This document shows, piece by piece, positions 14,505 to 46,800 of a DNA stretch of 64,000 nt. A program made the translations under genes and the position numbers. The notes under the pieces were generated by a model. That model saw nothing but the letters and a program-made list of their open reading frames with translations. It was not told the DNA's origin and did not search any database. The stretch is from positions 186,001 through 250,000 of IMG/VR virus record IMGVR_UViG_3300004151_000006, one strand, 5' to 3'. Within the stretch, counting starts at the first letter, position 1, and every line of letters begins with the position of its first letter.

Positions 14505-14534
14505 TGCATGGGTGGGGATATCCCCACCCATGCA
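14505..14534. terminator. Perfect 30-bp palindrome between convergent genes (bidirectional terminator candidate)
   Basis: TGCATGGGTGGGGAT|ATCCCCACCCATGCA. Confidence 0.7.
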
Positions 14535-17943: not shown

Positions 17944-18023
17944 AGGTTCCTCCTTTAGGATATATTTTTAACAATAAACTATTATGAGATTACAACAATG
18001 CATATAAAGTGATACAATAGATA

Positions 18024-18055
18024 TATGGATGCAGGCGTATACGCCTGCATCCATA
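18024..18055. terminator. Perfect 32-bp palindrome
   Basis: TATGGATGCAGGCGTA|TACGCCTGCATCCATA. Confidence 0.65.
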
Positions 18056-18064
18056 CAGTGTGGA

Positions 18065-18487
18065 CTATTCTTGTTTAAGAATAAATGGGAGTGCATTATA
18101 TGCTCTACGGATTTCATTTAATGTATATTGATGTTCAGCTACGTTGGTGAGATTATGAAATGCGGGGAGCATACCTATGACATCTCCAAATGGTCCATGG
18201 ATACTTGCAGCCACTGTAAATGGTTTAGTTTCATCTAAAAATTCAGTGGGGACAGCCTCACCTTTTTCATCATATTGTGCAAAATAGACCCACATATAGT
18301 TCGCACCACAAGGATTTTTCAATGGTACCATAGCACGAGGAAAACCAATACCAGTGTTAGGATCTTTAATAGCTACAGTGATGGTCATATGAAGTAGGTC
18401 AACTAATGTATCAGTATTTTTCAAAGGGATATGTGGAATATTAAAGATATCGGGTACCGGGATATTTTGTTGAGCTTGAAGAGGCAT
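18065..18487 (-). CDS. Hypothetical protein downstream of fibre tip A (possible fibre chaperone)
   Basis: TAAGGAG RBS before ATG 18487 (MPLQAQQ); function suggested by position only. Confidence 0.55.
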   Translation of the reverse strand: MPLQAQQNIPVPDIFNIPHIPLKNTDTLVDLLHMTITVAIKDPNTGIGFPRAMVPLKNPCGANYMWVYFAQYDEKGEAVPTEFLDETKPFTVAASIHGPFGDVIGMLPAFHNLTNVAEHQYTLNEIRRAYNALPFILKQE

Positions 18488-18584
18488 GATCTTCTCCTTA
18501 AGGGTATGTGTATGTGTAGACCCATCTGATGGGACATGTAGACTCTCTCGTAGTATATCCAATTTACTTACTCAAAAAAATATA

Positions 18585-19832
18585 TCACGATTTAGCTAAT
18601 CTACACCCAATGACCGAATATCCAGATCCATCCCAATATGAATTGTCATATGTAAATAATCCAGCATTATACCAATCATTACCTCTCCCACCAGATAACC
18701 AAGTATATGGACTATTGGTATATATTGTACAATAATCCGGAAATGTAGAATTAGATTCACTCCCATCAGTTAAAGAAGGTATAAATAATTCCATAAGATC
18801 GTGTATATTTTCATATTCATTGGTACTTGTACCAATAGTGAAACTACCATCACATATATCAACTATCCAACCCCTACCACTAGTATTGTGATCTAAAGTT
18901 AATGTATTGCTATTCAGTGGGTCAGTGAGTAGCAACTGTCTAGTATCTTCATCATATTTTATATTAGGTAAAATACACCAATAATGTGCCCAAAGATCAC
19001 ACATATACAGTGCATTTGATCCAGTTTTTCCTGTCTTAGGATATGTATTATGTGCAGTATTATCACCCCAAATACTTTGTACATTACTACCATTTCCAAA
19101 GATGAGAAGTAATATCTTAAGCAAGCTCATATCCCAAATATCAAAGAGTCTGAATCCAGTATATCCACCGCTATTTCTATTGAGAGCATATGTATTGAAT
19201 GTAGTTGGGGTCTTACTGGCAGTTACAGTTTTATTATATTTAGATGTAATACAAGTTTTTGTCCTCACTGTTTCTGTATTAGCTAAATAGGTACCCCACC
19301 AAATTTTATCTTTGATTGTATTGTCACGTTTAAATGCTGTTGCGGGTCTAAACCCAAGGTTTGGTGCATCAGCTATCCACCAACATTTTTTTCCAACACT
19401 ATCACTACCCATTGGACCGGATACATCCGTTTTGATATACAAGGTTGGTACTTCCATCATGATACATCCATCTATAGTGATTTGTTTTAATTTTGAATAT
19501 ATTGGATGAGAGGTATAAACAAAATCACTGATAAAATTACCCTGCCAATCAATAGTTTTAAATTGTCCACTGCCACCACCAGTAGATACCATACAAATTC
19601 CAACAATGTTAGCTGTTGGTCCAATGATAAAAGGTAGATCTACTATACTCCATTCACTATATCCGAGTTCATCAGTATAATAACGCACTCTAGCATATAT
19701 TGGTTTACCTTCTGGAAGATCTACTCCTTTTTCCACTATATCAATAGATTCAACATAAGTATCTAGATATTCATAGATCAGTGTAGAGAAGTCTTGCACT
19801 ATACTGATTTGAAAATGTGTTTTTGTTTCCAT
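18585..19832 (-). CDS. Tail-fibre tip A: half FN3-like N-terminal module plus C-type-lectin (Mtd/FGE-like) domain
   Basis: N-terminus THFQIS...PIYARVRY...GYSEWS; MMEVPTLY, WWGTYLA, DLWAHYW; C-terminus LSGGRGNDWYNAGLF...VIGCRL typical of CLec-fold adhesins. Confidence 0.65.
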   Translation of the reverse strand: METKTHFQISIVQDFSTLIYEYLDTYVESIDIVEKGVDLPEGKPIYARVRYYTDELGYSEWSIVDLPFIIGPTANIVGICMVSTGGGSGQFKTIDWQGNFISDFVYTSHPIYSKLKQITIDGCIMMEVPTLYIKTDVSGPMGSDSVGKKCWWIADAPNLGFRPATAFKRDNTIKDKIWWGTYLANTETVRTKTCITSKYNKTVTASKTPTTFNTYALNRNSGGYTGFRLFDIWDMSLLKILLLIFGNGSNVQSIWGDNTAHNTYPKTGKTGSNALYMCDLWAHYWCILPNIKYDEDTRQLLLTDPLNSNTLTLDHNTSGRGWIVDICDGSFTIGTSTNEYENIHDLMELFIPSLTDGSESNSTFPDYCTIYTNSPYTWLSGGRGNDWYNAGLFTYDNSYWDGSGYSVIGCRLAKS

Positions 19833-19877
19833 AATTAATCCTTTTTAAATAGATCTATATGTTGATTATAATGCATA

Positions 19878-19914
19878 ATAGAGTGCTCTCCCTGTGATGG
19901 GGAGAGCACTCTAT
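19878..19914. terminator. 15-bp stem hairpin between the fibre stalk and tip A
   Basis: ATAGAGTGCTCTCCC-TGTGATG-GGGAGAGCACTCTAT. Confidence 0.7.
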
Positions 19915-19919
19915 ATATA

Positions 19920-22900
19920 TTAGATATCCACCGCAACATTGATAGCATCGAAAGTAAATGTCACTGCATCTGAAGTGAGTACTGCATTACTTGCTGGATA
20001 TGTGATGGAGGGTGTGGCAATGATATAATGTGGTTTAATAGTAATATTGTATTGATTAACACTGACACCTCCAACTATAGACCAATCATTGATAGCCCAA
20101 TTATTGCTAGTATCAAAACAATGTTCATATGTAGCAATACCTAAAGTCACTACTGTATCTACAGCCACTTTTGGAAAATATATAGTGATATTCTCATTGG
20201 GTAATATTTCATAATTTTTTGATATACTTAAACCTGTCAATCCAGCACCATCAATAAACCATATGTAATAACCTCTAATTTGATCAGTATCAACACCATC
20301 AGCACCACCAGTCATCGAAACAGTCATTGAATTATTACCAGTTATAGTTGTTATTATACCAGTTACTGTGGGTGCGATTGGATAAGTGTTGATTTTACGA
20401 ACAAATGTTTTTGTAGTAGTTTCTAAACCGTCTGTTGCAGTAACAGTAAATGTAATAGTATCACCACGTACAGCACTGTTCGGTATAGTTATATTGAAAG
20501 TTTCATCATTTATTAAATTAAGCGATTTTGAAAAACCTATATTCGGATAAGTTGTAGAGATATTGTAAGTTATAGTCTGATTGGTACTATTAATATCAGT
20601 TATTCCACTGATTTTACATCCAGAATATATACCACCCCACCCACTATTTCCACTACCTAAAGGTACTAAATAATTTGGTAAATTGAAGATAGCTGAACTT
20701 AAATCTGGTAAACTATTTACAAGTGATGTGACTATTTTAGTAGCAACTTCACAATAATCAGATACTACAATAGTGAAACTGACTGTAGTATTTCTGGTAA
20801 TGTTATTACCAACAGTCATAGTGAATGACTGTCCACCAGGTATTGCAGTAGTATTAAAATCATGAGAAAAAGTAATATTTGCATCATTAGCATATAACCC
20901 ATATTCTACAACAGATTGACCAGCATCAGATGAACTACCACCTGTGATATTTAAAGTGTATATGCCGCCGGGTTTAATAATTGGAGGTAAATTATTAATG
21001 ACTGCACCACTTGCATTTGGTACCGTATTTATAATAGAAGTAAATGTGGTGTTGACAGTTTCTAATCCATCAGAAATGGTTACTGTGAATGTAATTGTAC
21101 TACCACGGGTAGCATCACTAGCAACAGATAAAGAAATATTTTCACCACTAGTGATATCAGTAGATTTGGATAATATCACTTTGGTAGTACTTGGTACAAT
21201 AGACATTTTCAATGTTTGATTATCAATATCTGTAGCAGTGGCTGAAATTGAATAGGTTGCACCAGGTACCAAATATGGAACAACATTGTGTGTAATAGCT
21301 GTTGAAGGTAAGGTATTAATTTTAGTAGTGAATACTTTATTGATGGTAGTTAGTCCATCACTAACAGCAACTGTCACTGTTATTATTTCTCCACGTGTGG
21401 CAGATTCACCTATAATGAGATTTATGCTTTCACCTGAAGCTATTCCGATATTTTTAGAGAATGTGGCATATAATTTATTTGAAGAGATTGAATATGTGAG
21501 TACTTGCCCATCGGGATCAGTAGCACCAGATATAGAAAAAGGTACAGTGCTGTTGGGTTTCACAATACTTGGAATTGTAGTAATAAGATTAGTTATTACA
21601 GGAGTATTATTGATCTTAATAGTTTTAGTAATACTCGATGTTTCAATTCCATCATTTCCAATAATCGTAAAAATAAGTGTTGTGTTTTCAGCGATATCAC
21701 CAATAATTACATCAAATGATTCGTTATGCATTAAACCTGTATTCTTTGAAAATGATACACCAACAGTATTGCAACTGATTGAATAAGTCAATCCACCAAT
21801 AACAGTCACATCAGTCATTCCTGAAAGGGTAGAAGTATAAGAAGTATTTGGTTTTACTATATTGGGTGTATTGAGTATTACATTTGACATATTGGGCAAT
21901 ACGTTAATAAGTACACCCATTGGTGAAGGTGTTGATTCTAAACCATCACTAGCAAAGATAGTAATATTAGGTGAACTACCACGAGTGATATCATTAGTTA
22001 CAGTCATGGTGATTTCTTCATCTGGTGCAATATCTGTAGTTTTGGAAAAACTTACTTTGGGGTCATTGCATACAATAGAATACAAGATAGCTGTCCCATT
22101 TGGGTCATTGAATCCAGAAAAAGAAAGTGGAGTAACTGTACCGGGGGCTACAATAGAAGGAATACCTGCCACCAAATCACCAATAGGTAGAGTATTTATT
22201 GCAGCGGTAAACGTATCTGTATTATATTCAAGCCCATCAAAGATCGTCACCGTAAAGATGATGGTCTTTCCACGAGTGATACCAACCTGTGGTGTAATGG
22301 CGAAAACTTCATTAATTGCAATACCAGCACTTTTAGAGAAATGTACATTTATATCATCACTCGTAATTGAATATGTGAGAGTTTGATTAGACTGTTCATC
22401 AATACTGGATACTGATACATTATAATCTTGTCCAGGTACTAATATTTCAGGTAAATTTTCAATTATAATACCTTCGGGCAATGTATTTACAGTGATAGGA
22501 AAAGTTTTATCTTTTGTAATATATCCATCATGTACAGATACTGTAAATATGACAGTGCTACCACGAATAACATCAGAATCTATTGACACAGTGAGTGCTT
22601 CATTTTCAAGAATATTGTTATCTTTAGAAAAAGTGAATTTCGGATCAGAAGATACAATACTGTATGTGAGTACTTGCCCATCGGGATCAGTAGCACCAGA
22701 TATACTGAATGGTACAGTACTATTGGGTTTCACAATAGTGGGTAAGTTTAATACCATATCGGTGATTATCGGTAATTGGTTGACTTTAAAAGTCTTTGTA
22801 ATCGATATACTTTCCACACCATCAGAAATATCAACAGTAAAAGTAACTATAGTTCCCAGTGGAATAGTTTCAGTGATGGTCATCATAAATGTTTCATTGG

Positions 22901-25900
22901 GTACCAATTTTTCAGATTTAGAAAATGACACATTTAAATTATCAGCACTAATGTCATATGTGAGGTTTTGATTATCCACATCTACACTAGTAATATTCAT
23001 ATCCACAGTTTGTCCAGGGATTACATATTGTGGAAAGTTATTAATAGTAACAATGTTGGAAGGTAAATGATTAATAATAGATGATATAGTTTTTGATGAA
23101 GTTTCTAATCCATCACTACCTGTGATAGTAAAAGTGATAGTACTACCACGAACAATATTACCAACATGGATATCAAAGTTTTCACCGTTAATGAGATCTG
23201 TAGATTTGGAAAAACTAATATCAGAATTATCACAAGTGATGATATATTTAAGATTTGTTTGACCGGGAGTTATATCTGTGATACCCGAAATGTGTACATT
23301 ATTGAGAGTGATATTTGGTGCAAAATATTCAGGAATGACTGCCGTAACATTCGTCATATCTGGTAAAGTATTAATATATGTGGTGAATGTATCCTTAAAT
23401 GCAGATTCTAATCCATCTGATGCAATGACTGTGAAATAAATATTTTCACCACGGATGATTCCGCTACCAATTGACATAGTAAATGTTTCACCTTCAATTA
23501 ATCCAGTTGATTTAGAAAAACTGATATTTGGATTCACTGTTTGAATGGTGTATGTGAGAGTAGAACTATTAATATCAGTAGCACCAGTAATGTTAAGTGT
23601 ATAATCTTCATTGGGGATACAGATAGTTGGGAGATTATTAATATTGAGTGCAGAGAGATCGGGAAGATTGTTGATTAAAGTACCACGAATGTGTTGATTG
23701 GTTTCTAATCCATCACTACCTGTGATAGTAAAAGTGGGATTTGTATTGCGTGCAGTATTACTAATAATAGTATCGAATGGTTCATTAGACGTGAGATCCG
23801 TAGACTTAGAAAATGTAATGGTAGGATCATTGCAAACAATAGAATATGTGAGTGGTTGTGCATGTGTATCAGTAATACCATTTAATTTAGTAGAATATGT
23901 AGCATTGGGTTTTATAATATTTGGTAATGAATAAGATATAGCAGTCATATTAGGAATAGTATTTACTTCATATACCAGTGTTTTATTAACAGATTCCAAT
24001 CCATCCATGACGGTCACAGTAAATGTAACAGCACTACCACGAGTAGTGTTGGTAAAGTTAACAATAATAGATTCACCGGGATCAATATCATTTACTTTAG
24101 AAAAATTGACACTCAGATCACTACTAACAATAGCATATTTAAGAGTTTGGGAATTGATATCACTACCACCATTTAAACTAATTTCATAATCAAAATTGGG
24201 CTTTACAATAAATGGGAGATTGTTTATAATTACATCAGTAGCTATCGGAAGTGTATTGGCTTCAGTGGTAATAGTCATATTGGTGGTCTCTAATCCATCA
24301 GAAATAGTCACAGTTAATGTGATGGGAGTACCACGATCAATGTTGTTAGCTACTAACATGGTAAATGTTTCACCACTGGTAATATCAGTAGATTTACTAA
24401 AAGTGATACCAGTATTATTACTAGAAATACTGTAATGTAAATCTTGTACAATGTCCATATCGGTAGAAATAATAGTAATGGGATAATTTTGTCCAGGGAT
24501 TAACAAATCAGGTACATTATGTGATATCCCAATTGAAGGCAGTGTATTAATAACAGAATAATATTCTTTAGTATTGGTTTCTAAACCATCAAATGTGGTG
24601 ACAGTGAAAGTAATGGTGCTACCACGAACTATATCAGCAGCAAAGCTAACATCAATATTTTCACCATTAGCAATGTTAATATCTTTAGAGAAAGTCACTT
24701 TAGGATCATTGGCTGCAATAGAATATACTATTCCTGGGATAGTCAATGTGGTATCAATAGCACCAATAACAGTAACAGTATGTGTACTATTGGGTTTTAC
24801 AATGGAGGGTACATCAAAATGAAGACCTGTAAGTATTGGAAGAGTGTTGACAATTGACTGTTTTATTGTGGGTGCACTATATTCCAAACCATCCGATCCA
24901 ATGATGGTGAAATTTACGGTATTTCCACGGGTCACATTACCAGTAGTGATAGTGAATATTTCACCTTCTGTAATACCTGTAGATTTGGAGATAGTGATAC
25001 TACCATCATTAACTGTGATTCCATATGTAAGAGTCTGCCCACCAGAGGTATCAGTGATACCAGTAAGAGTTACATCATTATACATCGTATTTGGTTTAAT
25101 GATATTAGGGAGATTAAAATTAATATCTGACATGTTGGGTAAAGTATTAACATATACATCAAACATCTTTTCTACAGTTTCAAGACCATGAGCTTTTACA
25201 GTAAATGTGACTGTAGATCCACGAGAGATATTTGTATTTGTGGTGATCTGAAATGATTCACCATCACTAAGACCTGAGGCTTTAGTAAAAGTTATCATGC
25301 CTTCAGGAGCATTGCTGGAGATATCATACACCAAAGGTACACCACTGTCATTTTCTGTACCATTAATATTAACCATATAGGGAGTATTTGGTTTTACAAT
25401 AGTAGGCAATGTATTGATTTGTGTATTGGTCATATCAGGTAATACATATGCGTGACTCGTAACATTAATATCGATAGATTCCATACCATCAAAGATAGTC
25501 ACTTTAAACAATACAGCATCACCACGAACAATATCATCACTTGTAAAGATGGTCACTGATTCATTGGGAGAAATACCTGTAGTTTTAGATAATGTTACTT
25601 TGGGATGTAAAGATATTACAGTATATGTAAGTGCTTGTCCATCGGGTTCAGTAGAAGTAAATACACATGTGGTATTTTCACCAGGAATGAGGAATGTAGG
25701 AATTGTATGTATTAAATCATTGATAGGGAGTTGATTTACTTTAGTGGTGATAGTTTTTTGGATGGTTTCTACACCATCAGAAATGTCTACTAAAATATCA
25801 ATAGATTTACCACGCAGAACATCATTAGTGACATTCATCTGTACTGGATCATCAGGATGAATATTGGTTGAAGGATTAAAAGCAACATGTGTATCATTAG

Positions 25901-27695
25901 CTAACAGCGTATATGTGATTTCTTGTTCATCAAATTCATTAGAATCAAAAGTAAGATCATACGTAGAGTTGGGTTTGATATAATCTGGTATGTTGTGAGC
26001 TAATACGTTAGATGGCAACATGTTAATTCTAGTAGTAAAGATCTTTGGTACCACTTCAAGACCATCAGTAATTAAACAAGTAAAAGATACGATATTTCCA
26101 CGGAGAACATTATTATTTACAGTGATAGTAATTTCTTCATCAACATTAAGATCGAAAGATTTATTTAAAACGATGTTGGTGGGATCATCAGTAATAATAG
26201 CATAACTAATCAATTGACCATCAACATCATTGACTCCAGAGATTTTGAAATTATAACTACCATTAGGTTTAATGTATTCTGGAAGAGTAGAGTTAATATT
26301 TGTGATATCAGGGAGTGTGTTAATTCTAGTAGTAAATATTTTATTGACAGTAGCACCAACACTATCAGTGACTGTCACTGTGATACTGACTAAAGTACCC
26401 CGATTAATATCCTGTGGCACAAACATCGTGACGGTTTCATTATTATCAATATTGATATTTTTAGTAAATGTAATAGTGGGCTGGTTGGTAGTAATGGCAT
26501 ATTTAAGAGACAATCCTTCTGGATCAACAGCACCAGAGATTGTAAAATCGATATTACTGTCTGGTTTTATGATAGTTGGAATAGATGTTGTGAGAGAAGT
26601 GATATTGGGAAGTTGATTGATCTTAGCTGTATTGAATGTACGAGTACTACTACCCATATAGCTATCAATAGCTATTACATCGAACACGATAGTGCTACCT
26701 GCGGTGGCACTATCAGCTACAATGATAGAGACTATTTCAAGTGGATTGATATTTTCTATTTTAGAGAATGTAATATGTGGATCTGTGGAGACAATATTAT
26801 ATTTGATATTGTGACCATCGGGATCGGTGGCACCAGATAATTGAAAATTGGTGCTAGTGTTTTTAGCTACCAAGTTAGGAAGAGTACATGTTAAAGTAGA
26901 TATATCGGGCAGTTGGTTGATCTTCAAACTAAAAGATTTAGTAGCCATACCATCTTTAGTATCATGTGCAGTCACTAAAAAGGACACAGTACTTCCACGT
27001 TCAGCATCATCGGCAAGAGTAAATGAAATATAATCATTTTCTATGATACCAGAAGTTTGATTAAACACTAAACTTGTATCTGAAATGGAATATAAAAGAC
27101 TATCTCCATAAGGAATATCAATATCAGTAGCTCCAGAAAAAGATATTGAGATGGTGTCTCCAGGATTAGCATAAAGTGGAAGACCATTGCATATTAAATT
27201 AGTGAGATCTGGTGCAACATTGTTGGTGATAGTATATTCTACCATGGTGGGAGGTGAAATATTGTTGACTTCATCATAAGCATAAAACGTGATCACCTGT
27301 TTTTCAAATCGGTCACCCACTAAAGCTATTGTAACTGTAGCACTATTGTTAATAACCTGGGGCTCTTCTATGGTAATGACAGTATCATCAGATTTAATGA
27401 TCTTAAATTTAGTAATACGGGTACCCACCAGCAAAGGTGTGGCTGTCAAAGTGATCATATATTCTTCTTCAGATTCTACTGTAAGAGGACCACTGATGAT
27501 GGGTTTTTCAATAGCTATAGGGATCTTAGCTACTTCAGCACGGATATCAGGGTGTGCTTCTTCACTAATATTGTGTGTAGCAACATAAGCAATATTGGAA
27601 CGCAAAAGGTTACTGGTATTTTCAATTTCAGCACTCGTAACAACTACTTGGTCAATTGCATCCTGCAATGTCTTGAGATCATCAGCTGAAGGCAT
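19920..27695 (-). CDS. Giant Ig/cadherin-like repeat tail-fibre stalk, 2591 aa
   Basis: AAAGGAG RBS before ATG 27695; fibre-head motif HNISEEAHPDIR; about 24 tandem ~97-aa repeats (N-x-L-P...ATDPDGQxLTYSI...FSK...RG...FTVTxSDG). Confidence 0.85.
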   Translation of the reverse strand: MPSADDLKTLQDAIDQVVVTSAEIENTSNLLRSNIAYVATHNISEEAHPDIRAEVAKIPIAIEKPIISGPLTVESEEEYMITLTATPLLVGTRITKFKIIKSDDTVITIEEPQVINNSATVTIALVGDRFEKQVITFYAYDEVNNISPPTMVEYTITNNVAPDLTNLICNGLPLYANPGDTISISFSGATDIDIPYGDSLLYSISDTSLVFNQTSGIIENDYISFTLADDAERGSTVSFLVTAHDTKDGMATKSFSLKINQLPDISTLTCTLPNLVAKNTSTNFQLSGATDPDGHNIKYNIVSTDPHITFSKIENINPLEIVSIIVADSATAGSTIVFDVIAIDSYMGSSTRTFNTAKINQLPNITSLTTSIPTIIKPDSNIDFTISGAVDPEGLSLKYAITTNQPTITFTKNINIDNNETVTMFVPQDINRGTLVSITVTVTDSVGATVNKIFTTRINTLPDITNINSTLPEYIKPNGSYNFKISGVNDVDGQLISYAIITDDPTNIVLNKSFDLNVDEEITITVNNNVLRGNIVSFTCLITDGLEVVPKIFTTRINMLPSNVLAHNIPDYIKPNSTYDLTFDSNEFDEQEITYTLLANDTHVAFNPSTNIHPDDPVQMNVTNDVLRGKSIDILVDISDGVETIQKTITTKVNQLPINDLIHTIPTFLIPGENTTCVFTSTEPDGQALTYTVISLHPKVTLSKTTGISPNESVTIFTSDDIVRGDAVLFKVTIFDGMESIDINVTSHAYVLPDMTNTQINTLPTIVKPNTPYMVNINGTENDSGVPLVYDISSNAPEGMITFTKASGLSDGESFQITTNTNISRGSTVTFTVKAHGLETVEKMFDVYVNTLPNMSDINFNLPNIIKPNTMYNDVTLTGITDTSGGQTLTYGITVNDGSITISKSTGITEGEIFTITTGNVTRGNTVNFTIIGSDGLEYSAPTIKQSIVNTLPILTGLHFDVPSIVKPNSTHTVTVIGAIDTTLTIPGIVYSIAANDPKVTFSKDINIANGENIDVSFAADIVRGSTITFTVTTFDGLETNTKEYYSVINTLPSIGISHNVPDLLIPGQNYPITIISTDMDIVQDLHYSISSNNTGITFSKSTDITSGETFTMLVANNIDRGTPITLTVTISDGLETTNMTITTEANTLPIATDVIINNLPFIVKPNFDYEISLNGGSDINSQTLKYAIVSSDLSVNFSKVNDIDPGESIIVNFTNTTRGSAVTFTVTVMDGLESVNKTLVYEVNTIPNMTAISYSLPNIIKPNATYSTKLNGITDTHAQPLTYSIVCNDPTITFSKSTDLTSNEPFDTIISNTARNTNPTFTITGSDGLETNQHIRGTLINNLPDLSALNINNLPTICIPNEDYTLNITGATDINSSTLTYTIQTVNPNISFSKSTGLIEGETFTMSIGSGIIRGENIYFTVIASDGLESAFKDTFTTYINTLPDMTNVTAVIPEYFAPNITLNNVHISGITDITPGQTNLKYIITCDNSDISFSKSTDLINGENFDIHVGNIVRGSTITFTITGSDGLETSSKTISSIINHLPSNIVTINNFPQYVIPGQTVDMNITSVDVDNQNLTYDISADNLNVSFSKSEKLVPNETFMMTITETIPLGTIVTFTVDISDGVESISITKTFKVNQLPIITDMVLNLPTIVKPNSTVPFSISGATDPDGQVLTYSIVSSDPKFTFSKDNNILENEALTVSIDSDVIRGSTVIFTVSVHDGYITKDKTFPITVNTLPEGIIIENLPEILVPGQDYNVSVSSIDEQSNQTLTYSITSDDINVHFSKSAGIAINEVFAITPQVGITRGKTIIFTVTIFDGLEYNTDTFTAAINTLPIGDLVAGIPSIVAPGTVTPLSFSGFNDPNGTAILYSIVCNDPKVSFSKTTDIAPDEEITMTVTNDITRGSSPNITIFASDGLESTPSPMGVLINVLPNMSNVILNTPNIVKPNTSYTSTLSGMTDVTVIGGLTYSISCNTVGVSFSKNTGLMHNESFDVIIGDIAENTTLIFTIIGNDGIETSSITKTIKINNTPVITNLITTIPSIVKPNSTVPFSISGATDPDGQVLTYSISSNKLYATFSKNIGIASGESINLIIGESATRGEIITVTVAVSDGLTTINKVFTTKINTLPSTAITHNVVPYLVPGATYSISATATDIDNQTLKMSIVPSTTKVILSKSTDITSGENISLSVASDATRGSTITFTVTISDGLETVNTTFTSIINTVPNASGAVINNLPPIIKPGGIYTLNITGGSSSDAGQSVVEYGLYANDANITFSHDFNTTAIPGGQSFTMTVGNNITRNTTVSFTIVVSDYCEVATKIVTSLVNSLPDLSSAIFNLPNYLVPLGSGNSGWGGIYSGCKISGITDINSTNQTITYNISTTYPNIGFSKSLNLINDETFNITIPNSAVRGDTITFTVTATDGLETTTKTFVRKINTYPIAPTVTGIITTITGNNSMTVSMTGGADGVDTDQIRGYYIWFIDGAGLTGLSISKNYEILPNENITIYFPKVAVDTVVTLGIATYEHCFDTSNNWAINDWSIVGGVSVNQYNITIKPHYIIATPSITYPASNAVLTSDAVTFTFDAINVAVDI
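21493..22704. repeat. Identical 42-nt direct repeat inside the Ig-repeat gene (21493-21534 and 22663-22704)
   Basis: TATGTGAGTACTTGCCCATCGGGATCAGTAGCACCAGATATA occurs at both positions, 1170 nt apart. Confidence 0.85.
23101..23736. repeat. Identical 36-nt direct repeat inside the Ig-repeat gene (23101-23136 and 23701-23736)
   Basis: GTTTCTAATCCATCACTACCTGTGATAGTAAAAGTG occurs twice, 600 nt apart. Confidence 0.85.
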
Positions 27696-27748
27696 ATGTG
27701 ATACTCCTTTAAGAGTAGATTTTATCATGTATGTAGTACGATACACGC

Positions 27749-27815
27749 AGACTATAAGATGGAATTTAGATATATCACTACAGTTGTTATTATTGTCATT
27801 TCCATCCTATAGTCT
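27749..27815. promoter_or_regulatory. 16-bp imperfect inverted repeat (15/16) around a 35-nt spacer in the divergent fibre intergenic region
   Basis: AGACTATAAGATGGAA (27749-27764) and TTCCATCCTATAGTCT (27800-27815). Confidence 0.5.
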
Positions 27816-27848
27816 TTAGATACCATCACCTCTAGGAGGATCACATAT

Positions 27849-29351
27849 ATGGCTACGCCCTCTGGTACTCAATTTCAAGTAGCTACAGATAGTAGCTTTG
27901 CTAATAAACTCATAGACTACTCTGGTGCATACAAGACGAGTCATGTGACTGCTAGTGGTACGCTCACCAAAGGTGTCCCACTGTATAGCAGAGTGAGACA
28001 TGCTAGTGTAGAGACGAGCTATAGTGACTGGAGCAGTACAAAGCAGTTTAGTATAGCGAATTATGTGAAAAAAGTAGTTTATTTTAATAATGTTGTTGGG
28101 TATCTGTTATATTACCATATTTTTACACAATCATTTGACTCAAATTCTAATCTTTTTTATGTCTTTAGATCTCAAACTGATGATTCTTGGAATATTGTAA
28201 AATTAAATAAAAATTTCAATATTCAAAAAGTATTGACAATAATTAATCCTAATCAAATTTTAGCAAATTTTTGTATAGATGCATCAGATAATGTAATTGG
28301 TGTTTTTCGTAATTATGATTCCAATACAACAGCATATTATCCAACTATAGTCAAATATGATAATAATTTGAATGTACGGTGGTGTAAAAAAATAGTGTTT
28401 TTAAATAGTGAAATATCATCAATGCAATATAATTTTATTTATACCGATGGTGATGAAATAATAATTGGGATACAAAGTAGAAACATTGCTAACACTCTTT
28501 TTTATTCACATTTATTGTGGGTGAATACCAATGGTGAAGTGATCAAGTGTGGAATTCTTGGTGGTGGTTATCACAACGATTTTAAAGTTACTTCAATTAC
28601 AAAAGACAATCTTAATAATTTTTATATTAGTTCAGCATACACAGTGGGTGTTGCACAAAATGGTGGTCAAGTGTCTGGTGGGTGTCTCATGAAAATAACA
28701 GATACAAATTCACTCATGTGGGTGAACTCATCGAATCCAAATATTAGCACAACTAATTTTTCCTTTCATGTAATTTTAGGATCTACAATTATAGTCTGCG
28801 ATTATTCTTATATAACTTGTATAAATAATATCACCAAAGATGTCTTGTGGCAAAAAACCATACCATATGGTAGATTTGGTAATATGTTGGTATATTCTGA
28901 AAACATCTATATTCTATATGTAATTTCGACAAGTGCTGCCGGTGTTATTAAAATGGATATGAATGGAAATGTCCACTGGATACGTAGTTTTAAAGTTAAT
29001 AATACTGGGGTTGTACCAATAAGTCTTGGTATTGATAATAAGACTGGTACTATTTGGATTAATGGCGCATTAAATTATAGTGGTACTTCTGGTTATTTTT
29101 GGGGTATGGATCCTGTCGATGGTGCACCAATTGGTAATTTTGTTACAAACAGTACTTTTGCATTTGATACATTCACATCTATATTAAATGTTAGTGGTGA
29201 AGGATTATATGATTTATCAAGTACTTTGGGATATCTTAATGTTACTAACACATCCACAGTAGTCAATACAATCAATTTCGATTATAATTTGTTAGGAATA
29301 ACAGACACTACTGCTACAACACAGATCACTACAACAGTCTGTGATTATTGA
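27849..29351 (+). CDS. Tail-fibre tip B: half FN3-like N-terminal module plus a beta-propeller-like domain
   Basis: AGGAGG RBS; N-terminus TQFQVATDSSF...PLYSRVRH...SYSDWS; repeated blades (IVKYDNNLNVRW, KDNLNNFYIS, KMDMNGNVHWIRS). Confidence 0.6.
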   Translation: MATPSGTQFQVATDSSFANKLIDYSGAYKTSHVTASGTLTKGVPLYSRVRHASVETSYSDWSSTKQFSIANYVKKVVYFNNVVGYLLYYHIFTQSFDSNSNLFYVFRSQTDDSWNIVKLNKNFNIQKVLTIINPNQILANFCIDASDNVIGVFRNYDSNTTAYYPTIVKYDNNLNVRWCKKIVFLNSEISSMQYNFIYTDGDEIIIGIQSRNIANTLFYSHLLWVNTNGEVIKCGILGGGYHNDFKVTSITKDNLNNFYISSAYTVGVAQNGGQVSGGCLMKITDTNSLMWVNSSNPNISTTNFSFHVILGSTIIVCDYSYITCINNITKDVLWQKTIPYGRFGNMLVYSENIYILYVISTSAAGVIKMDMNGNVHWIRSFKVNNTGVVPISLGIDNKTGTIWINGALNYSGTSGYFWGMDPVDGAPIGNFVTNSTFAFDTFTSILNVSGEGLYDLSSTLGYLNVTNTSTVVNTINFDYNLLGITDTTATTQITTTVCDY

Positions 29352-30597: not shown

Positions 30598-30598
30598 T

Positions 30599-33709: not shown

Positions 33710-33713
33710 TATA

Positions 33714-33743: not shown

Positions 33744-33752
33744 CATTTACTT

Positions 33753-33803: not shown

Positions 33804-35312
33804 TTGTATATGCGGGCTATTTATAATGAAGATATGGATTTCTTTGATAAATCCATATCTGATGAACAGTGGTTTCTCAATAAAATTTTAGAAGGAAGAT
33901 TTGAATTATTAGAAAATGATACGGTGATCTATGATAAAGTAAGAAATACTCACAGAAAACCTGGAATAAAACATAATGGTGATACTCCATCCGTCCGGTA
34001 TAAAGTGTATGATATTAAAATTGCATCCCCACAACGTGGTAAGAGATCAATTTATCTTCATAAATTTGTATTTATATTTTATACAAAAAATATAGTACTA
34101 AAAAATACTTATTTAAAGTTTAAAGATGGGAATATTGGGAATACAAGTTTTGATAATTTGGAATTAGTATATAAACGAAAAGAAAATGATGATTTTTATA
34201 ATGATGAAATTTCTGCAAAGCAATGGTTTTATTCTGAAATTATAAAAGATCGTTTTGTATTATCTGAAAATGATACTAAAATATACGATAAGGTGCGAGA
34301 TAAATATGTCATACCTGGAGAATTTTCAATTTATTATAAAGACAATAAACGCAAAAAGAATTATCTTCGGTATTGCGTTGATTCTAGTATTCCGTATTAT
34401 AAAGAACGGTATATTCAATTGCATCAATTCGTTTGGATGTATTATCATAAACAATTGATACCTGAAGGACATGAGGTACACCATAAAGACGAAGATAAAC
34501 ACAATAATTGGCATGGAAATTTAGAACTGATATCTAATTTTGACCACATGCGACATCACAACAACAGTACAGAACGTCGACAAAAATTGACATCTCCTGA
34601 AAGTATAGCTCGACAAGTGAAACATAGACTATTATATCGAATGTTAAAACATAAGTATTGTTTTTCTGAAAAGAAGCTTTGTAGTAAGTGTAAAAGGTTA
34701 TTACCATTTATACGTTTTGATAAAGCAAACGAACAAAATTATATTTTAAAGTTAGAATCACTATGTAAAGAATGTAAATATATTTTATATGGGGACAATA
34801 AAAAGAACATAGACCGCTATCAATTCCCATCCGGGGTTTTATCAGATAAAATTGTTCTTGATATAAGATTTTTATTTAACATTGTAAATCAATCTTTCTA
34901 TCTTGTACAAAAGAAGTATCCTAACATTTCTAAACAAGATCTTAAAGATATCATTCTAGGTAATACATACACTCACATAGATACACTTCATGGTATCCAC
35001 GATACTCCTTATAGAAATGAAAAATATATCAATCAAATTGAACACTGTCATATACAACATGCATACAAACAGGCTGATTTCACTCCAGAAGAGTTATCCA
35101 AGATCTATGGAAGATCATTAAATGAAATTATCTATGTACTTACCGTAGGAAGGTATAGACCAGAAATAGAAATGGTAATGGATGTGCAGAAGTATGTGAA
35201 ACTATATAACGGGATATATACACAGCGTGAAGAATATATAATTGATTTCAATAAACTCAAGGAACGTGATATTAGTATCCCCACCAATGTGGTAGCTGGT
35301 GAATTAGTTTAA
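33804..35312 (+). CDS. Free-standing HNH homing endonuclease with two HNH-like modules
   Basis: LHKFVF...FKDGNIGNTSFDNLEL and LHQFVW...VHHKDEDKHNNWHGNLEL; CSKC/CKEC Zn pairs. Confidence 0.75.
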   Translation: MYMRAIYNEDMDFFDKSISDEQWFLNKILEGRFELLENDTVIYDKVRNTHRKPGIKHNGDTPSVRYKVYDIKIASPQRGKRSIYLHKFVFIFYTKNIVLKNTYLKFKDGNIGNTSFDNLELVYKRKENDDFYNDEISAKQWFYSEIIKDRFVLSENDTKIYDKVRDKYVIPGEFSIYYKDNKRKKNYLRYCVDSSIPYYKERYIQLHQFVWMYYHKQLIPEGHEVHHKDEDKHNNWHGNLELISNFDHMRHHNNSTERRQKLTSPESIARQVKHRLLYRMLKHKYCFSEKKLCSKCKRLLPFIRFDKANEQNYILKLESLCKECKYILYGDNKKNIDRYQFPSGVLSDKIVLDIRFLFNIVNQSFYLVQKKYPNISKQDLKDIILGNTYTHIDTLHGIHDTPYRNEKYINQIEHCHIQHAYKQADFTPEELSKIYGRSLNEIIYVLTVGRYRPEIEMVMDVQKYVKLYNGIYTQREEYIIDFNKLKERDISIPTNVVAGELV

Positions 35313-43896: not shown

Positions 43897-46800
43897 ATGT
43901 TGACTATGCAGGACTTTTTCTTTGAATGTGATGATATTGAAACAAATATCATCTCCAATGAAATGTTTAACTATCCAAGATTTAAACTTAATTATCATAA
44001 CTGGAAGTATTCCTTCTTGACTAATAATTTTTTTGACATTGGTACAATGCAATTGCCATGGGATGCTACGTATCATACTGCAGATAATTGGTTTGGTGGC
44101 GTACAACAGGACTATCCAAATATAGTCAATGATCCTTTTATCTCTAACGAAATGTATTATAAATGGATCTATCATCAAACTATATTTCAATTAAATGGTC
44201 CTATTCAATATGATACTAAATACAACTATTTGACTAGTGGGTTGTCTACTATCTTAAATGCATTTCGATCACAATATAAAGCACAGTTTCGATATCTTCA
44301 AAAATTAGAAGACACTCCAAGAAAGAAAGAATCTCTCACTATCATTAATTACAATCCTTTATTTAGATGTTACACATTTGGTGCATTGCAATATTTTAAG
44401 AAAGTAAATTTGATATTATCTACTATGTTTAATACAGTAGCTCACATGATTGATATGTATCCAGATAAACATCAATATATCTTGATCCCATGGAATAATG
44501 AAATCTATACTCAAGATCAATTTACACGTACAAAGAAAAAGATCGATATCTCTTCATTGAGAAATCCCAATAGTTTTCATTTTATTTTTATGGTCTATTT
44601 GATGAATTTCATTGATCCTAATACTGATCTTGGACTCTTTAATCAATATCCAGAAAAGTACTGGAAAGAAACTAATTTAGTATTTCGAAATGGTAATAAA
44701 GCCACTATCTTTAATTTAGAAGATCTCAAGACTCTTAATGATAAAAATAGAGCCTATCTCAAGGTAGTATCGCATCTCAATATCTTATCTACCATAGGGA
44801 GCAGTACTATAGTACTGGATACCTCTGAAGTAGATGGTATCTCTGGACCAACAGATCGTATCCCAGTGATCACTGAGACTAAATGTACTATCTCATTACC
44901 TGATATCACTACAGTACCTTTAGATAAGACTAATCCTGAAGTCACTGATAAATCAGAGAGTGTCTCTAAAGATCCAGTACCTATCGTAGATACTACACAG
45001 AGTATCATGCCTAGCAGTATCATTGGTACAACCAAATCAGTGATCCAAAAGACTTTTATCCCTATGGTAAAATCCACAGTATCTATTATGCCTAAAGTGA
45101 TCTCTAAATCAGATACACCAAATCAAATATTAGAAGACACTAAACCTGTGATGAGAAATCTCATTCCACAATTAGCTTCTAATATCACCCAGATAGAATC
45201 AGAGACTGATCCCAATGTAATCAAACAGCGTAGTAAAGAATATTTAGAAGACATTGATGCACAAGCTGTAACATATATTGATAATAGAGAAGATCTCACC
45301 CCAAAACAAAAAGAAAGACTCAAGACTGTAGCAAAGAAATATAAACAAGTCACTATTGGTGAAGAGACTCTTCAAGATATCATCCTTAAAAACAATGATG
45401 TACTCATTGATGAAGATCCACCACAGTCTGTGATAGATACTTTACCTGATAAGACTATGGCTAAATCAAAAGCATTTCATTTTGATAAAGCTTATATCCA
45501 TAAAACTATGAAAAAAGACTTAGCCAGCATTGCTGTAAACTTTAATAAACTTGGTATGTTTTTGACAGATATTAAGACTTCACAGACTATTAATGAATTG
45601 ACACAATCTGAAGAATACACTTTTAAGTTTGAAGATGTCCAAGGTAAATCACATACTGTCAAATTCAGCGTGCCTATCATTGATAGTAATGGATATTGTT
45701 ATATCAACGGTGTCAAAAAGTATTTGAAGAAACAAATGATCAATATCCCAATTTGTAAGATAGGTGAGAATAAGGTTTCTATGGTCTCCAATCAGAATAA
45801 AGTATTGATCTTGCGTAATGAAACTAAAGCTCATAGTTTTGATACACAGATAGATAAAATAGTAGAACTTGGAAAATCAGTACTTAATATAATCTATGGT
45901 ACACTGGATCTCAATCTTTCTTTAGCTTATGAATATGTCTCCATTGCACAAAAATATAATACCATTACTATTAAATCACAAGATGGTAAATCACATACTT
46001 TATGTTTTGATTATTATAATAGATTTAAAGATATTGCTGATGTAGCACTACATTCTAAATTAGATGCATTGGAGAAACAATATGGTACACTCTTTGGTAA
46101 AGATGGTCATACTGGATATTATTTTATTGATACTAATAACTTAGTCAGTTTGATTACATTGGATAGAAAAGATATCACACCTTCAGATGTGGTATCTATT
46201 GTAGATATCTTTAAGACTACATATCCTAAAGAGTTAGCTAGTAAGATAGGTTTCATCACAGAATGGATAGATATTAACTTAGTCTCTAAACCTTTACCTG
46301 TTGGATTTATCTTAGCATACCGATATGGTCTAGTCAACATGATGGATCACCTTGGGGTGAAATATAAGCTCTTAGCTAAACGTGGTAATAGTGTGTTAGA
46401 AGAGAGTGAATTCTCAGGTGAGAATGTTATTTCTGCTACTGAGTCTTTTGATACTTTGACTATGGATAAAGTGATCAATATTGATACTCGTAGGAAATGG
46501 AAGATCGATGATGTCAAACATCTTGAACTTTTAGAAAAGTACAATATATCTAAAACTGAATGTATCATCAGTGGTAGTGCTGCTATGATAGCACATCGAT
46601 ATCCGAACTGTATCAACAATGATCTTGATATTGTGGTGACTGATAGAGTATATGCTAAACTTAAAAAGGATACTACAAATTTTTCAGTACATAAAGCACG
46701 TGATGGTATTGGTACTGATATAAAATTGGTCAGCAAAGATGAGAAACTTGAGATCACTAAATATTTCCATGCTTTATCTGAAGAATATACTTTTGATGTG

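What the first reader, a model, noticed from the sequence alone, without database searches (positions are those of the whole stretch)
18585..29351. Split-domain modular tail fibre: one Ig stalk, two interchangeable tip proteins
Seen: the 2591-aa stalk ends with IATPSITYPASNAVLTSDAVTFTFDAINVAVDI*. Two separate genes, each with its own RBS, begin with the same module: tip A METKTHFQISIVQDF...PIYARVRY...YSEWS and tip B MATPSGTQFQVATDSSF...PLYSRVRH...YSDWS. The tips then carry unrelated heads (C-type lectin versus beta-propeller). Tip A lies downstream of the stalk; tip B is divergent upstream. Knowledge (recalled, not searched): in many fibres PSITxP...TxTxSAF...TxFQ(I/V)ATDxxF...YxRVR...SxWS is one continuous FN3-like domain. 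Inference: that domain is split across polypeptides, so the stalk end captures either tip by beta-strand complementation. This would be a protein-level receptor switch needing no DNA inversion.
Basis: partly seen in the sequence, partly recalled or inferred. Interest (0 to 1): 0.85.

Follow-up and report, generated by a model that had tools for sequence, protein, structure and literature searches.

The report
Phage fibre domain split between genes
A 300-kb uncultured phage encodes a very long fibre protein that ends with the first third of a small beta-sandwich (FN3-like) domain, and at least four separate receptor-binding "tip" proteins that begin with the other two thirds. This suggests that tips attach to the fibre by completing that domain; comparative sequence evidence supports it well, but no physical test has been done.

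Summary
The 2591-aa Ig-repeat stalk (27695..19920, -) ends with ~30 residues that match only the N-terminal A/A'/B strands of a ~105-aa FN3-like repeat. Tip A (19832..18585, -) and tip B (27849..29351, +) start, at residue 1-7, with the remaining C-to-G strands.

I tested this with profiles built only from 324 contiguous repeats of unrelated proteins. I also used an AlphaFold model of a contiguous repeat (pLDDT 97.7; FN3 matches over its full length). A natural fused homologue, P0087, has three complete repeats followed directly by a tip-A-type head.

The stop, hairpin, promoter-like motif, RBS and ATG junction is identical in independent assemblies. It is also conserved, with compensatory hairpin changes, in a diverged syntenic phage. 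There the stalk's last 34 aa are 76% identical, against 34% for the preceding 140 aa. So this is neither an assembly error nor read-through.

The genome carries two more tip-B paralogues. Their docking modules are 82-88% identical and their heads 23-25% identical. At least 26 other metagenomic proteins start with the same half-domain.

Trans-complementation itself, the sharing of one stalk by all tips, and a tail location remain inferences. A "mosaic display" is more likely than a "switch".

The parts
19920..27695 (-). Stalk gene: 2591 aa. It has a ~275-aa N-terminal region, ~23 tandem ~97-100-aa Ig-like (He_PIG/Big_9/cadherin-like) repeats, a ~120-aa last domain, and then the half-domain tail.
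   Evidence: Weak Pfam Sde0182_C hit. Atlas Ig-like leads. The gene call of 2591 aa is seen on 4 contigs, including the 300,343-bp contig.
19923..20024 (-). Last 34 codons of the stalk. This is the N-half (strands A, A', B) of an FN3-like domain and the proposed 'plug' given in trans.
   Evidence: The N34 profile hits only here in the whole window, E 1.4e-4, 27.4 bits as a 40-mer. It is 26/34 identical to relative P0152, with 13 synonymous codon changes, against 34% identity for the preceding 140 aa.
19880..19912 (-). Perfect 13-bp hairpin (AGAGTGCTCTCCC / loop CATCACA / GGGAGAGCACTCT) starting 8 nt after the stalk stop. It is terminator-like or a transcript-end element.
   Evidence: Fold of the spacer: -30.1 kcal/mol, z = -6.6. 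The relative L017 keeps a hairpin at the same place through three compensatory base-pair changes. The simple terminator scan did not call it because the T-tract is short.
19855..19864 (-). CAACATATAG motif, 23 nt upstream of the tip A ATG. Candidate phage promoter element.
   Evidence: CA[AT]C[ACT]TATAG occurs three times in the window: upstream of tip A, tip B and the stalk. It is also upstream of the L017 tip A and of P0009 and P0010. The broader CANNNTATAG pattern is not enriched overall (10 matches against 17 expected), so this is only a lead.
18585..19832 (-). Tip A gene, 415 aa: FN3 C-half (aa 1-~66) followed by an Mtd/FGE-sulfatase-like (C-type-lectin-like) fibre head.
   Evidence: An identical protein is found on 5-6 contigs from different samples.
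19635..19832 (-). Tip A N-terminal module: strands C, C', E, F, G of the FN3-like domain. This is the proposed 'socket'.
   Evidence: Match to fullrep/C69 profile positions 61-121 of 135. The AlphaFold model of tip A alone shows strands 3-10, 18-25 and 44-53, with no strand assigned where E should be.
27849..29351 (+). Tip B gene, 500 aa: FN3 C-half (aa 1-~68) followed by a beta-propeller head.
27849..28052 (+). Tip B N-terminal module (FN3 C-half). It is part of a ~260-nt cassette repeated at the 5' ends of paralogues P0009 and P0010 elsewhere in the genome.
   Evidence: DNA alignment; module 82-88% aa identity, heads 23-25%.
27752..27812 (.). Divergent control region between the stalk and tip B. 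It holds CATCTTATAG (27761..27752, - strand, ~57 nt before the stalk ATG) and CATCCTATAG (27803..27812, + strand, 37 nt before the tip B ATG).

Best explanation
**What it is.** This is a gene fission inside a single FN3-like beta-sandwich.
- The long Ig-repeat fibre ('stalk') ends with strands A, A' and B of the domain.
- Tip A, encoded just downstream as its own transcription and translation unit, starts with strands C, C', E, F and G and then carries a C-type-lectin-like receptor-binding head.

**How it most likely works (inferred).** The two polypeptides are made separately. The stalk's ~30-residue tail then inserts into the tip's incomplete sandwich, with B pairing with E and A' pairing with G. 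This rebuilds the ABE sheet and the hydrophobic core, and so fastens the head non-covalently to the fibre end. It resembles donor-strand complementation in pili, but with about three strands donated.

**The other tips.** Tip B and its two paralogues P0009 and P0010 have beta-propeller heads behind a nearly identical copy of the same half-domain. They use the same socket. They dock either on the same stalk tail, giving virions a mixture of heads, or on another protein, not yet seen, that ends in an N-half.

**Shown:** the two halves, the split point, its conservation, the existence of contiguous and fused homologues, and the fibre-head folds.

**Inferred:** physical complementation, stoichiometry, which tips share the stalk, and virion (tail) location.
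For: 1. **Profiles from outside the window.** Profiles built only from 324 contiguous repeats of other proteins place the N-half at the extreme stalk C-terminus and the C-half at the extreme N-termini of the tips, and nowhere else in 64 kb.
2. **Repeat period.** Contiguous repeats have a period of ~105 aa while the tip module is ~70 aa, so ~35 aa are missing from the tips.
3. **Pfam on contiguous relatives.** They hit Ig_Rha78A_N, PhoD_N and fn3, with the C-half mapping to profile positions ~26-81/90 and 41-83/84.
4. **One compact domain.** The AlphaFold model of a contiguous repeat has pLDDT 97.7 and pTM 0.88 and is one compact domain with 8 strands. The first three strands belong to the N-half. 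Foldseek aligns ~100-112 columns to solved FN3 domains, TM up to 0.75.
5. **Fused homologue.** P0087 (942 aa) has 3 complete repeats followed directly by a tip-A-type head. It has the same length after the split point as tip A, so the tips have nothing extra to replace strands A and B.
6. **Core kept hydrophobic.** Core positions of the C-half stay hydrophobic in 26 'split' tips, just as in 324 contiguous repeats. There are no hydrophobic-to-polar changes.
7. **Conserved split.** Syntenic relative L017 keeps the same split: a stalk ending ...AVLTSDAVTFTFDAINVTVQT*, a hairpin, a TATAG motif, an RBS, and tip A. The tail is 76% identical with 13 synonymous changes, against 34% for the preceding 140 aa, and tip A is ~70-76% identical.
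8. **Independent assemblies.** The junction is identical in independent assemblies.
9. **Paralogous tips.** Three tip-B paralogues in one genome keep the module (82-88%) while their heads diverge (23-25%).
10. **A protein with both halves.** P0117 is a complete ORF that starts with a C-half and ends with an N-half around three whole repeats. This is the architecture expected if the halves pair.
11. **Tip alone.** In the tip A model on its own, strand E is not assigned as a strand, consistent with its missing B partner.
Against: - No complex could be predicted or measured.
- The N-half match is short and modest: 17.7 bits in the context of the whole stalk.
- AlphaFold models the tip A module alone with pLDDT 80-91, so it might be stable without a partner.
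- In four other phage fragments with half-domain-first tips (L007, L013, L018, L019) no gene ending in an N-half lies in the sequence available around the tip, at most 10 kb to each side and less where the contig ends.
- The gene upstream of P0117 ends with a complete repeat.
- Only two stalks with an N-half tail were found in total.
- The tip A and tip B modules are only 34% identical.
- Only ~97 kb of the ~300-kb genome was inspected.
- The stalk sits among nucleotide-metabolism genes, not in the tail module.
Confidence: 0.6

Rival explanations
1. The split is real, but pairing is specific. The stalk tail complements tip A only. The tip-B family (tip B, P0009, P0010) docks on a different protein ending in an N-half, or on another structure near the tail tube/sheath block. 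On this reading there is no sharing of one stalk and no competition between heads.
For: Tip A is the only tip syntenic with the stalk in both phages, and relative L017 has no tip B at the divergent position next to the stalk. P0009, P0010 and P0044 lie next to tail tube (PF23971) and ~965-aa structural genes. The tip A and tip B modules are 34% identical, whereas the tip-B paralogues are 82-88% identical to each other.
Against: No second protein ending in an N-half was found in the 64-kb window or in the ~33 kb around P0009 and P0010. Tip B is divergently paired with the stalk and shares its promoter-like motif.
Confidence: 0.35
2. The tip N-modules are autonomous adaptor domains that bind some other virion component. 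The N-half at the stalk end is only a remnant of the fission, or a cap, with no role in tip attachment.
For: AlphaFold gives the tip A module pLDDT 80-91 without a partner. Many half-domain-first tips have no N-half gene nearby. Heads of the same type also occur behind unrelated N-terminal adaptors: P0163 and the L002 gene.
Against: The stalk tail is the best-conserved part of the distal stalk, 76% against 34% identity, with many synonymous changes. That is not expected of a relic. The exposed core positions of the tips remain hydrophobic. P0117 carries both halves at opposite ends.
Confidence: 0.17
3. Stalk and tip A are made as one polypeptide by read-through, ribosomal bypass or splicing across the 87-nt spacer.
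For: In the window tip A happens to be in frame with the stalk: 7914 nt between the two starts. A strong hairpin follows the stop.
Against: The spacer contains four in-frame stop codons. In relative L017 tip A is not in frame with the stalk. Both tip A genes have their own RBS and ATG. Tip B and its paralogues start with the same module with no stalk upstream. Rfam finds no intron in the spacer, although it does detect a group I intron elsewhere in the window.
Confidence: 0.03
4. The break is an assembly or sequencing error, or a recent inactivating mutation (pseudogene).
For: Metagenomic origin only. The tip A homologue in L017 is itself broken into two ORFs.
Against: The junction is identical in a JGI and a Logan assembly from different samples, and the part of the spacer held in a third contig is identical too; tip A lies on 5-6 contigs. 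The same split architecture occurs in a phage whose stalk is only ~34-53% identical. At least 26 other proteins start at the same point of the domain.
Confidence: 0.02

Closest known systems
Donor-strand complementation/exchange in chaperone-usher pili (established knowledge, not searched here)
   Same: An Ig-type beta-sandwich is encoded incomplete in one polypeptide and completed by strand(s) supplied from another. This gives a very stable non-covalent joint that strings subunits into a fibre and attaches a tip adhesin.
   Different: Pilins lack one strand (G), donated by an N-terminal extension, and need a periplasmic chaperone and an usher. Here about three strands (A, A', B; ~30 aa) would be donated from a C-terminus, in the cytoplasm of an infected cell, with no chaperone or usher evident. 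The fold is FN3-like.
Chimallivirus DUF7941 fibre proteins (Goslar gp22/gp23 and relatives; PMC13742148)
   Same: A jumbo phage with multisubunit RNAPs. Several paralogues share one N-terminal docking module followed by different carbohydrate-binding, hydrolase or LRR heads. Assembly is predicted to be head-to-tail through a contiguous intermolecular beta-sheet.
   Different: The module is unrelated (DUF7941, no Pfam hit here). In Goslar a disordered linker docks on a complete globular domain. Here a recognisable single domain is cut in two, and contiguous homologues exist.
Multi-RBP or 'branched' phage fibres with a conserved N-terminal anchor and variable heads, e.g. CBA120 tailspikes, G7C gp63.1/gp66, DT57C LtfA/LtfB (my knowledge; the DT57C paper surfaced but was not read)
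   Same: Several receptor-binding proteins in one genome have a conserved anchor and divergent heads. Host range is widened without DNA rearrangement.
   Different: Known anchors are complete domains binding complete domains (gp10-like/XD modules, adaptor proteins). A joint made by re-forming one split domain has not, to my knowledge, been described for them.
Contiguous homologue P0087 and tandem FN3-like repeat proteins (Pfam PF25788 Ig_Rha78A_N, PF16655 PhoD_N, PF00041 fn3)
   Same: Same repeat sequence family. P0087 has the same tip-A-type head directly after the repeat.
   Different: In these proteins the domain is encoded in one piece. In the window it is divided between two genes.
Invertible tail-fibre segments of Mu (G segment) and P1 (C segment) (established knowledge)
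   Same: A constant fibre part is combined with alternative distal parts.
   Different: Those use a site-specific invertase and fuse alternative exons at the DNA level, so only one variant is made per genome state. Here no recombinase was seen among the ORFs I scanned, mainly between about 14.5 and 35.3 kb and two outer blocks, each tip has its own expression signals, and all can be made at once.
Engineered split-domain pairs such as SpyTag/SpyCatcher (split CnaB2) (my knowledge)
   Same: A beta-sandwich cut into a short peptide and a larger remainder that reassemble spontaneously.
   Different: Those are man-made and lock with an isopeptide bond. This would be a natural, non-covalent example.

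Membership tests
FN3-like beta-sandwich (Pfam fn3 PF00041 / Ig_Rha78A_N PF25788 / PhoD_N PF16655 group) | Sequence match to a curated family model above its gathering score | tested here: inconclusive
   Contiguous relatives pass: P0003 scores 87 bits against a 27.4-bit cut-off, and P0008 scores 69 bits to PhoD_N and 37.9 bits to fn3. The window's two halves taken separately give no Pfam hit even at E <= 10. They are linked to the family only through my profiles of the contiguous relatives.
FN3-like beta-sandwich | Seven- or eight-strand two-sheet sandwich (ABE / C'CFG) forming one domain | tested here: met
   This was tested on the contiguous homologue P0087:501-607. AlphaFold gives pLDDT 97.7 and pTM 0.88, with strands at 11-13, 18-21, 26-29, 41-49, 57-60, 69-71, 81-90 and 102-106. 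Foldseek matches solved FN3 domains over 100-112 columns, TM 0.5-0.75. It was not tested for the reassembled window pair.
Donor-strand-complemented fibre subunits (works like; not proposed as a homologue) | One partner encodes an incomplete sandwich | tested here: met
   The tips start at profile position ~58-61 of a 135-position repeat profile. There is no hidden upstream coding sequence, since stops lie 4 and 12 codons upstream. They have no extra residues compared with fused P0087.
Donor-strand-complemented fibre subunits | The missing strands are present at a terminus of another polypeptide of the same system | tested here: met
   The stalk's last ~30 aa match N-half profile positions 2-29 of 34 and end 5 aa before the stop. 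The same holds in relative P0152.
Donor-strand-complemented fibre subunits | The two pieces physically associate and rebuild the fold | not testable with these tools
   Only single chains native to the window or to fetched records can be folded. No complex prediction and no experiment was possible.
Donor-strand-complemented fibre subunits | Dedicated chaperone and usher | tested here: not met
   No such genes among the neighbours scanned. The 165-aa ORF after tip A has no family hit, and the relative L017 has no ORF at that position.
Multi-RBP phage systems (conserved anchor plus variable head) | Paralogous proteins with a conserved N-terminal module and divergent C-terminal heads in one genome | tested here: met
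   Tip B, P0009 and P0010 have modules 82-88% identical and heads 23-25% identical. All lie on the 300,343-bp contig together with the stalk and tip A.
Multi-RBP phage systems | Heads have receptor-binding-protein folds | tested here: met
   The tip A head resembles Mtd_N, tail-collar-fibre and BppU-associated heads (TM 0.8-0.86; BFVD E 1e-11). The tip B head is an SBBP/DUF5122 propeller. These rest on predicted structures only.
Multi-RBP phage systems | The proteins are virion components attached to the tail | not testable with these tools
   The phage is uncultured. The only evidence is neighbourhood: tip-B paralogues lie beside tail tube genes, while the stalk lies among nucleotide-metabolism genes.
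Invertase-driven tail-fibre switches (Mu G, P1 C) | Site-specific invertase and inverted repeats bracketing alternative fibre 3' exons | tested here: not met
   No recombinase among the ORFs scanned, mainly between about 14.5 and 35.3 kb. No long inverted repeats around the stalk or tips beyond one weak 42-nt pair. The tips are complete genes with their own starts.
DGR-diversified Mtd-type variable proteins | C-type-lectin-type head with a template/variable repeat pair, reverse transcriptase and Avd nearby | tested here: not met
   The head is Mtd/TaqVP-like. However, no repeat pairs with the tip A 3' end within 10-40 kb, and no RT or Avd is seen near it. A relative (L018) does have bAvd next to its tip-A-type gene.

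The most novel reading that the evidence does not exclude
A natural, self-assembling split-FN3 'plug and socket' is a general way for large phages to build fibres. A ~30-residue C-terminal tail (strands A, A', B) of one protein completes the headless sandwich at the N-terminus of any of several receptor-binding proteins. One stalk type could then display a mixture of at least four heads. Proteins such as P0117, which carry a socket at one end and a plug at the other, could polymerise head-to-tail. The system would be widespread: at least 26 metagenomic tip families with at least three head types.
Probability: 0.4. Interest if true: 0.8.

Novelty: new variant of a known kind. Interest (0 to 1): 0.62.

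Why it matters
If the halves do pair, this would be a joint for attaching receptor-binding heads to phage fibres that I have not found described. It would be a single small domain divided between two genes and rebuilt in trans.

- **Fibre assembly.** It would explain how very large uncultured phages mount several unrelated heads without DNA inversion or fused genes.
- **Annotation rule.** It would give a simple sequence rule for pairing fibre shafts with their tips in metagenomes: a protein that starts with the C-half needs a protein that ends with the N-half.
- **Protein tool.** It would offer a natural non-covalent split-domain pair that could be tested as a protein-assembly tool.

Even without the physical proof, the case is a clean, conserved example of gene fission inside a domain, with contiguous, split and doubly split (P0117) forms all available for comparison.

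Tried and rejected
- **Direct family searches.** Pfam and PHROGs on tip A, tip B, their N-modules and heads and the stalk end, and PHROGs on other stalk pieces, gave nothing. PDB sequence search gave only a sub-threshold cytokine-receptor FN3 hint.
- **135-position profile.** The full-length repeat profile did not report the stalk at all. The match appeared only with a profile restricted to the N-half. An earlier attempt to build that profile failed on a script error.
- **Collection scans.** Megablast of 14 kb against GenBank phages gave no match. Five IMG/VR scans (the two tips singly, and alignments A1, A2, A3) and one JGI metagenome scan (A8) returned, apart from the L002 head relative, only this same phage.
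- **Partner genes near other tips.** I looked next to other half-domain-first tips in L006, L007, L013, L018 and L019 and found no N-half terminus in the sequence available around them, at most 10 kb to each side.
- **Read-through or bypass.** Rejected: four in-frame stops, and the frame is not conserved in L017.
- **Intron in the spacer.** Rejected: Rfam finds none there.
- **DGR diversification of tip A.** No template repeat found.
- **Promoter motif.** The loose pattern is not enriched, so it stays only a lead.
- **Stalk N-terminus.** No anchoring domain was identified. There were only Ig-like leads at sub-0.9 scores.
- **Literature.** Searches for strand complementation in tail fibres returned nothing directly equivalent.


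Full report
**Setting**

The window is positions 186,001-250,000 of IMG/VR contig UViG_3300004151_000006 (286,688 bp). It carries split multisubunit RNA polymerase genes, a baseplate protein, NrdD/NrdG, dCMP deaminase and thymidylate synthase. Its RNAP beta subunit is at most 27% identical to those of AR9/PBS1, phiKZ-like and other jumbo phages. It is therefore a distant, uncultured member of the jumbo phages with their own RNAPs. There is no nucleotide match in GenBank phages.

**Observation**

- The three genes are as described.
- The stalk runs 27695..19920 on the minus strand (2591 aa; the ORF extends to GTG 27746).
- Tip A runs 19832..18585 on the minus strand (415 aa).
- Tip B runs 27849..29351 on the plus strand (500 aa).
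- Between the stalk's TAA and the tip A ATG lie 87 nt. They contain a perfect 13-bp hairpin (-30 kcal/mol, z = -6.6) and an AAAGGA ribosome-binding site.
- The two tips share their first ~60 residues (34% identity, E 1e-10).

**Is the shared module half of a domain?**

An exhaustive profile search with the two tip modules found 421 proteins. They fall into two classes.

- In long proteins the module is an internal tandem repeat with a period of about 105 aa, while the module itself covers only about 70 aa.
- The extra ~35 aa read PxITSPxxGatxvxxxpTLTSSAF. This is the pattern of the stalk's tail.

From 324 such contiguous repeats, none from this window, I built three profiles: a whole-repeat profile, a 34-position N-half profile and a 69-position C-half profile.

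- Against all 847 six-frame segments of the window, the whole-repeat and C-half profiles hit only tip A and tip B, at their first residues. The matches start at about profile position 58-61 of 135.
- The N-half profile hits only the last ~30 residues of the stalk, ending 5 residues before the stop. The E-value is 1.4e-4. As an isolated 40-mer the tail scores 27.4 bits, against at most 8.7 bits anywhere else in the 2591 residues.
- The whole-repeat profile alone did not detect the stalk, so the N-half evidence is real but modest.

**Fold**

- Contiguous relatives pass Pfam thresholds for Ig_Rha78A_N, PhoD_N and fn3. The C-half maps to roughly the last two thirds of those models.
- An AlphaFold model of the repeat that precedes the head in P0087 is a single compact all-beta domain (pLDDT 97.7, pTM 0.88).
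- Three short strands come from the N-half (11-13, 18-21, 26-29) and five from the C-half.
- Foldseek aligns 100-112 columns of it to solved FN3 domains such as rhamnosidase N-domains, neogenin, titin and Robo3.
- The split point is therefore the B-C loop. The tips lack two of the three strands of the ABE sheet.
- Tip A modelled alone keeps strands C, C' and F, but the E segment is not assigned as a strand.
- Core positions of the C-half remain hydrophobic in 26 split tips, exactly as in contiguous repeats.
- Compared with the fused homologue, the tips have no extra residues that could replace A and B.

**Fused homologue**

P0087 (942 aa) has an N-terminal domain, three complete repeats, and then immediately a tip-A-type head ending ...RLAKV (tip A ends ...RLAKS).

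**Not an artefact and not read-through**

- Tip A is carried by 5-6 contigs from different samples.
- The junction is identical in a JGI and a Logan assembly, and the 71 nt of spacer held in a third contig are identical too.
- A diverged syntenic phage (L017; stalk P0152, 3353 aa) has the same arrangement: a stalk ending ...IATPTITYPTEGAVLTSDAVTFTFDAINVTVQT*, a hairpin at the same place kept by three compensatory pair changes, a conserved ..TATATAG.. motif, an RBS, and a tip A homologue starting MPDIQNAQTHFQVSTVSDF....
- The last 34 stalk residues are 26/34 identical with 13 synonymous codon differences. The preceding 140 aa are 34% identical, and tip A is 70-76% identical. The tail therefore evolves at the rate of the tip, not of the stalk.
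- The spacer has four in-frame stops, and in L017 tip A is out of frame with the stalk. This excludes read-through.
- Rfam finds no intron there.

- The stalk and tip A also lie on a 300,343-bp contig (Ga0209800_10000051). That contig carries two further tip-B paralogues, P0009 (470 aa) and P0010 (505 aa).
- In the sample of the window these two lie at the two ends of a separate 13,632-bp contig. 286,688 + 13,632 is approximately 300,343, and the coordinates fit. The assembly evidently broke at the repeated ~260-nt cassette (about 50 nt upstream plus codons 1-70) shared by tip B, P0009 and P0010.
- Their modules are 82-88% identical and their heads 23-25% identical.
- P0009 and P0010 flank, as inverted repeats, a block with the tail tube protein (PF23971), a 964-aa protein and a phiKZ_IP-family protein. 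In another phage (L013) a tip-B-type gene follows tube and 967-aa genes on the same strand.
- Relative L017 has no tip B at the divergent position next to the stalk.
- In all, 31 proteins in hand start with the C-half (26 or more besides the window's own). They have at least three head types.

**Heads**

- The tip A head matches predicted phage fibre heads: clusters carrying Mtd_N, Phage_tail_fib or BppU_N (TM 0.8-0.86), BFVD 'tail collar fiber' (E down to 1e-11), and weakly the DGR variable protein TaqVP in the PDB. This is a C-type-lectin/FGE-like fold.
- The tip B head matches SBBP/DUF5122 beta-propellers.
- The same tip-A-type head also occurs behind unrelated N-terminal adaptors (the L002 gene and P0163), so heads and adaptors are shuffled.

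**A protein with both halves**

P0117 (417 aa, L021) is a complete ORF with its own RBS, ATG and TAA. It begins with a C-half, has three whole repeats and ends with an N-half. That architecture makes sense if the halves pair, either head-to-tail or by ring closure.

**Mechanism proposed**

The stalk and tips are separate products. The stalk tail supplies strands A, A' and B to the tip's incomplete sandwich and so fastens a receptor-binding head to the fibre. All steps up to 'two complementary halves exist and are conserved' are shown. Association itself is inferred.

Whether tip B, P0009 and P0010 use the same tail is open. I found no other N-half terminus in about 97 kb of the genome, but about 200 kb is unseen.

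Because the stalk, tip A and tip B all carry CA[AT]C[ACT]TATAG 23-57 nt upstream of their starts, co-expression and a mixed display seem more likely than a switch. That motif is only a lead.

'Tail' fibre is also an inference. The stalk lies among nucleotide-metabolism genes, and no anchoring domain was recognised.

**Weak points**

- No complex prediction was possible.
- The N-half match is short.
- AlphaFold is fairly confident about the tip module on its own (pLDDT 80-91).
- In four other phage fragments no partner gene lies in the sequence available around the tip, at most 10 kb to each side.
- The gene before P0117 ends with a whole repeat.
- Only two stalks with such a tail are known so far.

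**Comparison with known systems**

- In mechanism this would resemble donor-strand complementation of chaperone-usher pili. It differs in that about three strands are donated from a C-terminus, the fold is FN3-like, and there is no chaperone or usher.
- In biology it resembles multi-RBP phages with a conserved anchor and variable heads.
- It also resembles the recently described DUF7941 fibre proteins of chimalliviruses. Those share an N-terminal module, carry varied heads and are predicted to join head-to-tail through an intermolecular beta-sheet (PMC13742148).
- It is not an invertase-type switch as in Mu or P1.
- I found no report of a fibre joint made by re-forming one split domain, but the library is incomplete.

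I rate it a new variant of a known kind.

Noticed in passing
window 47862-48182 (+): A group I intron (RF00028, 64.5 bits) lies exactly between the two RNAP beta'-like ORFs 43897..47916 and 48177..49391. Their PHROG 3148 matches abut (775-1050 and 1051-1420). This RNAP gene is therefore interrupted by an intron rather than split into two genes.
   Followed up: partly
window 30536-35312 (+): NrdD (1057 aa) has a ~140-aa stretch (aa 610-750) with a weak terminase-like PHROG hit, which suggests an insert. A 502-aa HNH endonuclease ORF follows directly (33804..35312).
   Followed up: no
L021:531-1784 (Logan SRR30830637): P0117 is a complete 417-aa ORF that starts with the FN3 C-half, has three whole repeats and ends with the N-half, followed by a palindrome. 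It is a candidate self-polymerising or ring-closing fibre unit.
   Followed up: partly
L008 and L010 (contig Ga0209800_10000051, ~254.9-268.6 kb); outside the window: A 13.6-kb block holding tail tube PF23971, a 964-aa protein and a phiKZ_IP-family protein is bracketed by inverted ~260-nt repeats. The repeats are the 5' cassettes of tip paralogues P0009 and P0010. One metagenome assembly broke exactly there, so the block could in principle invert by homologous recombination.
   Followed up: partly
window 19855-19864 (-), 27752-27761 (-), 27803-27812 (+): The motif CA[AT]C[ACT]TATAG occurs only three times in 64 kb, each time 23-57 nt upstream of the stalk, tip A or tip B start. It also lies upstream of P0009, P0010 and the L017 tip A. 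It may be a promoter for this gene set.
   Followed up: partly
L018:11757-12503 (Logan SRR33881092, 109-kb contig): A bAvd gene (PF22296, a diversity-generating-retroelement accessory protein) lies just downstream of a tip-A-type gene (P0159). There is a 2.2-kb stretch with no called gene upstream. Some relatives may diversify this head by a DGR.
   Followed up: no
L017:14601-15859: The tip A homologue of the syntenic relative is broken into 159-aa and 181-aa ORFs, with the middle of the head missing or frameshifted. This is either a pseudogene or an error in that Logan contig.
   Followed up: no
window 18022-18057 (-) and 14514-14557 / 36060-36103: There is a strong 16-bp hairpin with a T-rich tail after ORF 18065..18562, which ends the tip A transcription unit. 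Separately, GGGGATATCCCC-type palindromes with T-runs recur at gene ends 21.5 kb apart. These look like the phage's terminators.
   Followed up: no
L002:9830-10972 (IMG/VR 504-kb contig UViG_3300028886_000026): A megaphage gene has a tip-A-type head (25% identity) behind a different N-terminal adaptor. It sits in a cluster of fibre-like genes, so heads are exchanged between adaptor types.
   Followed up: partly
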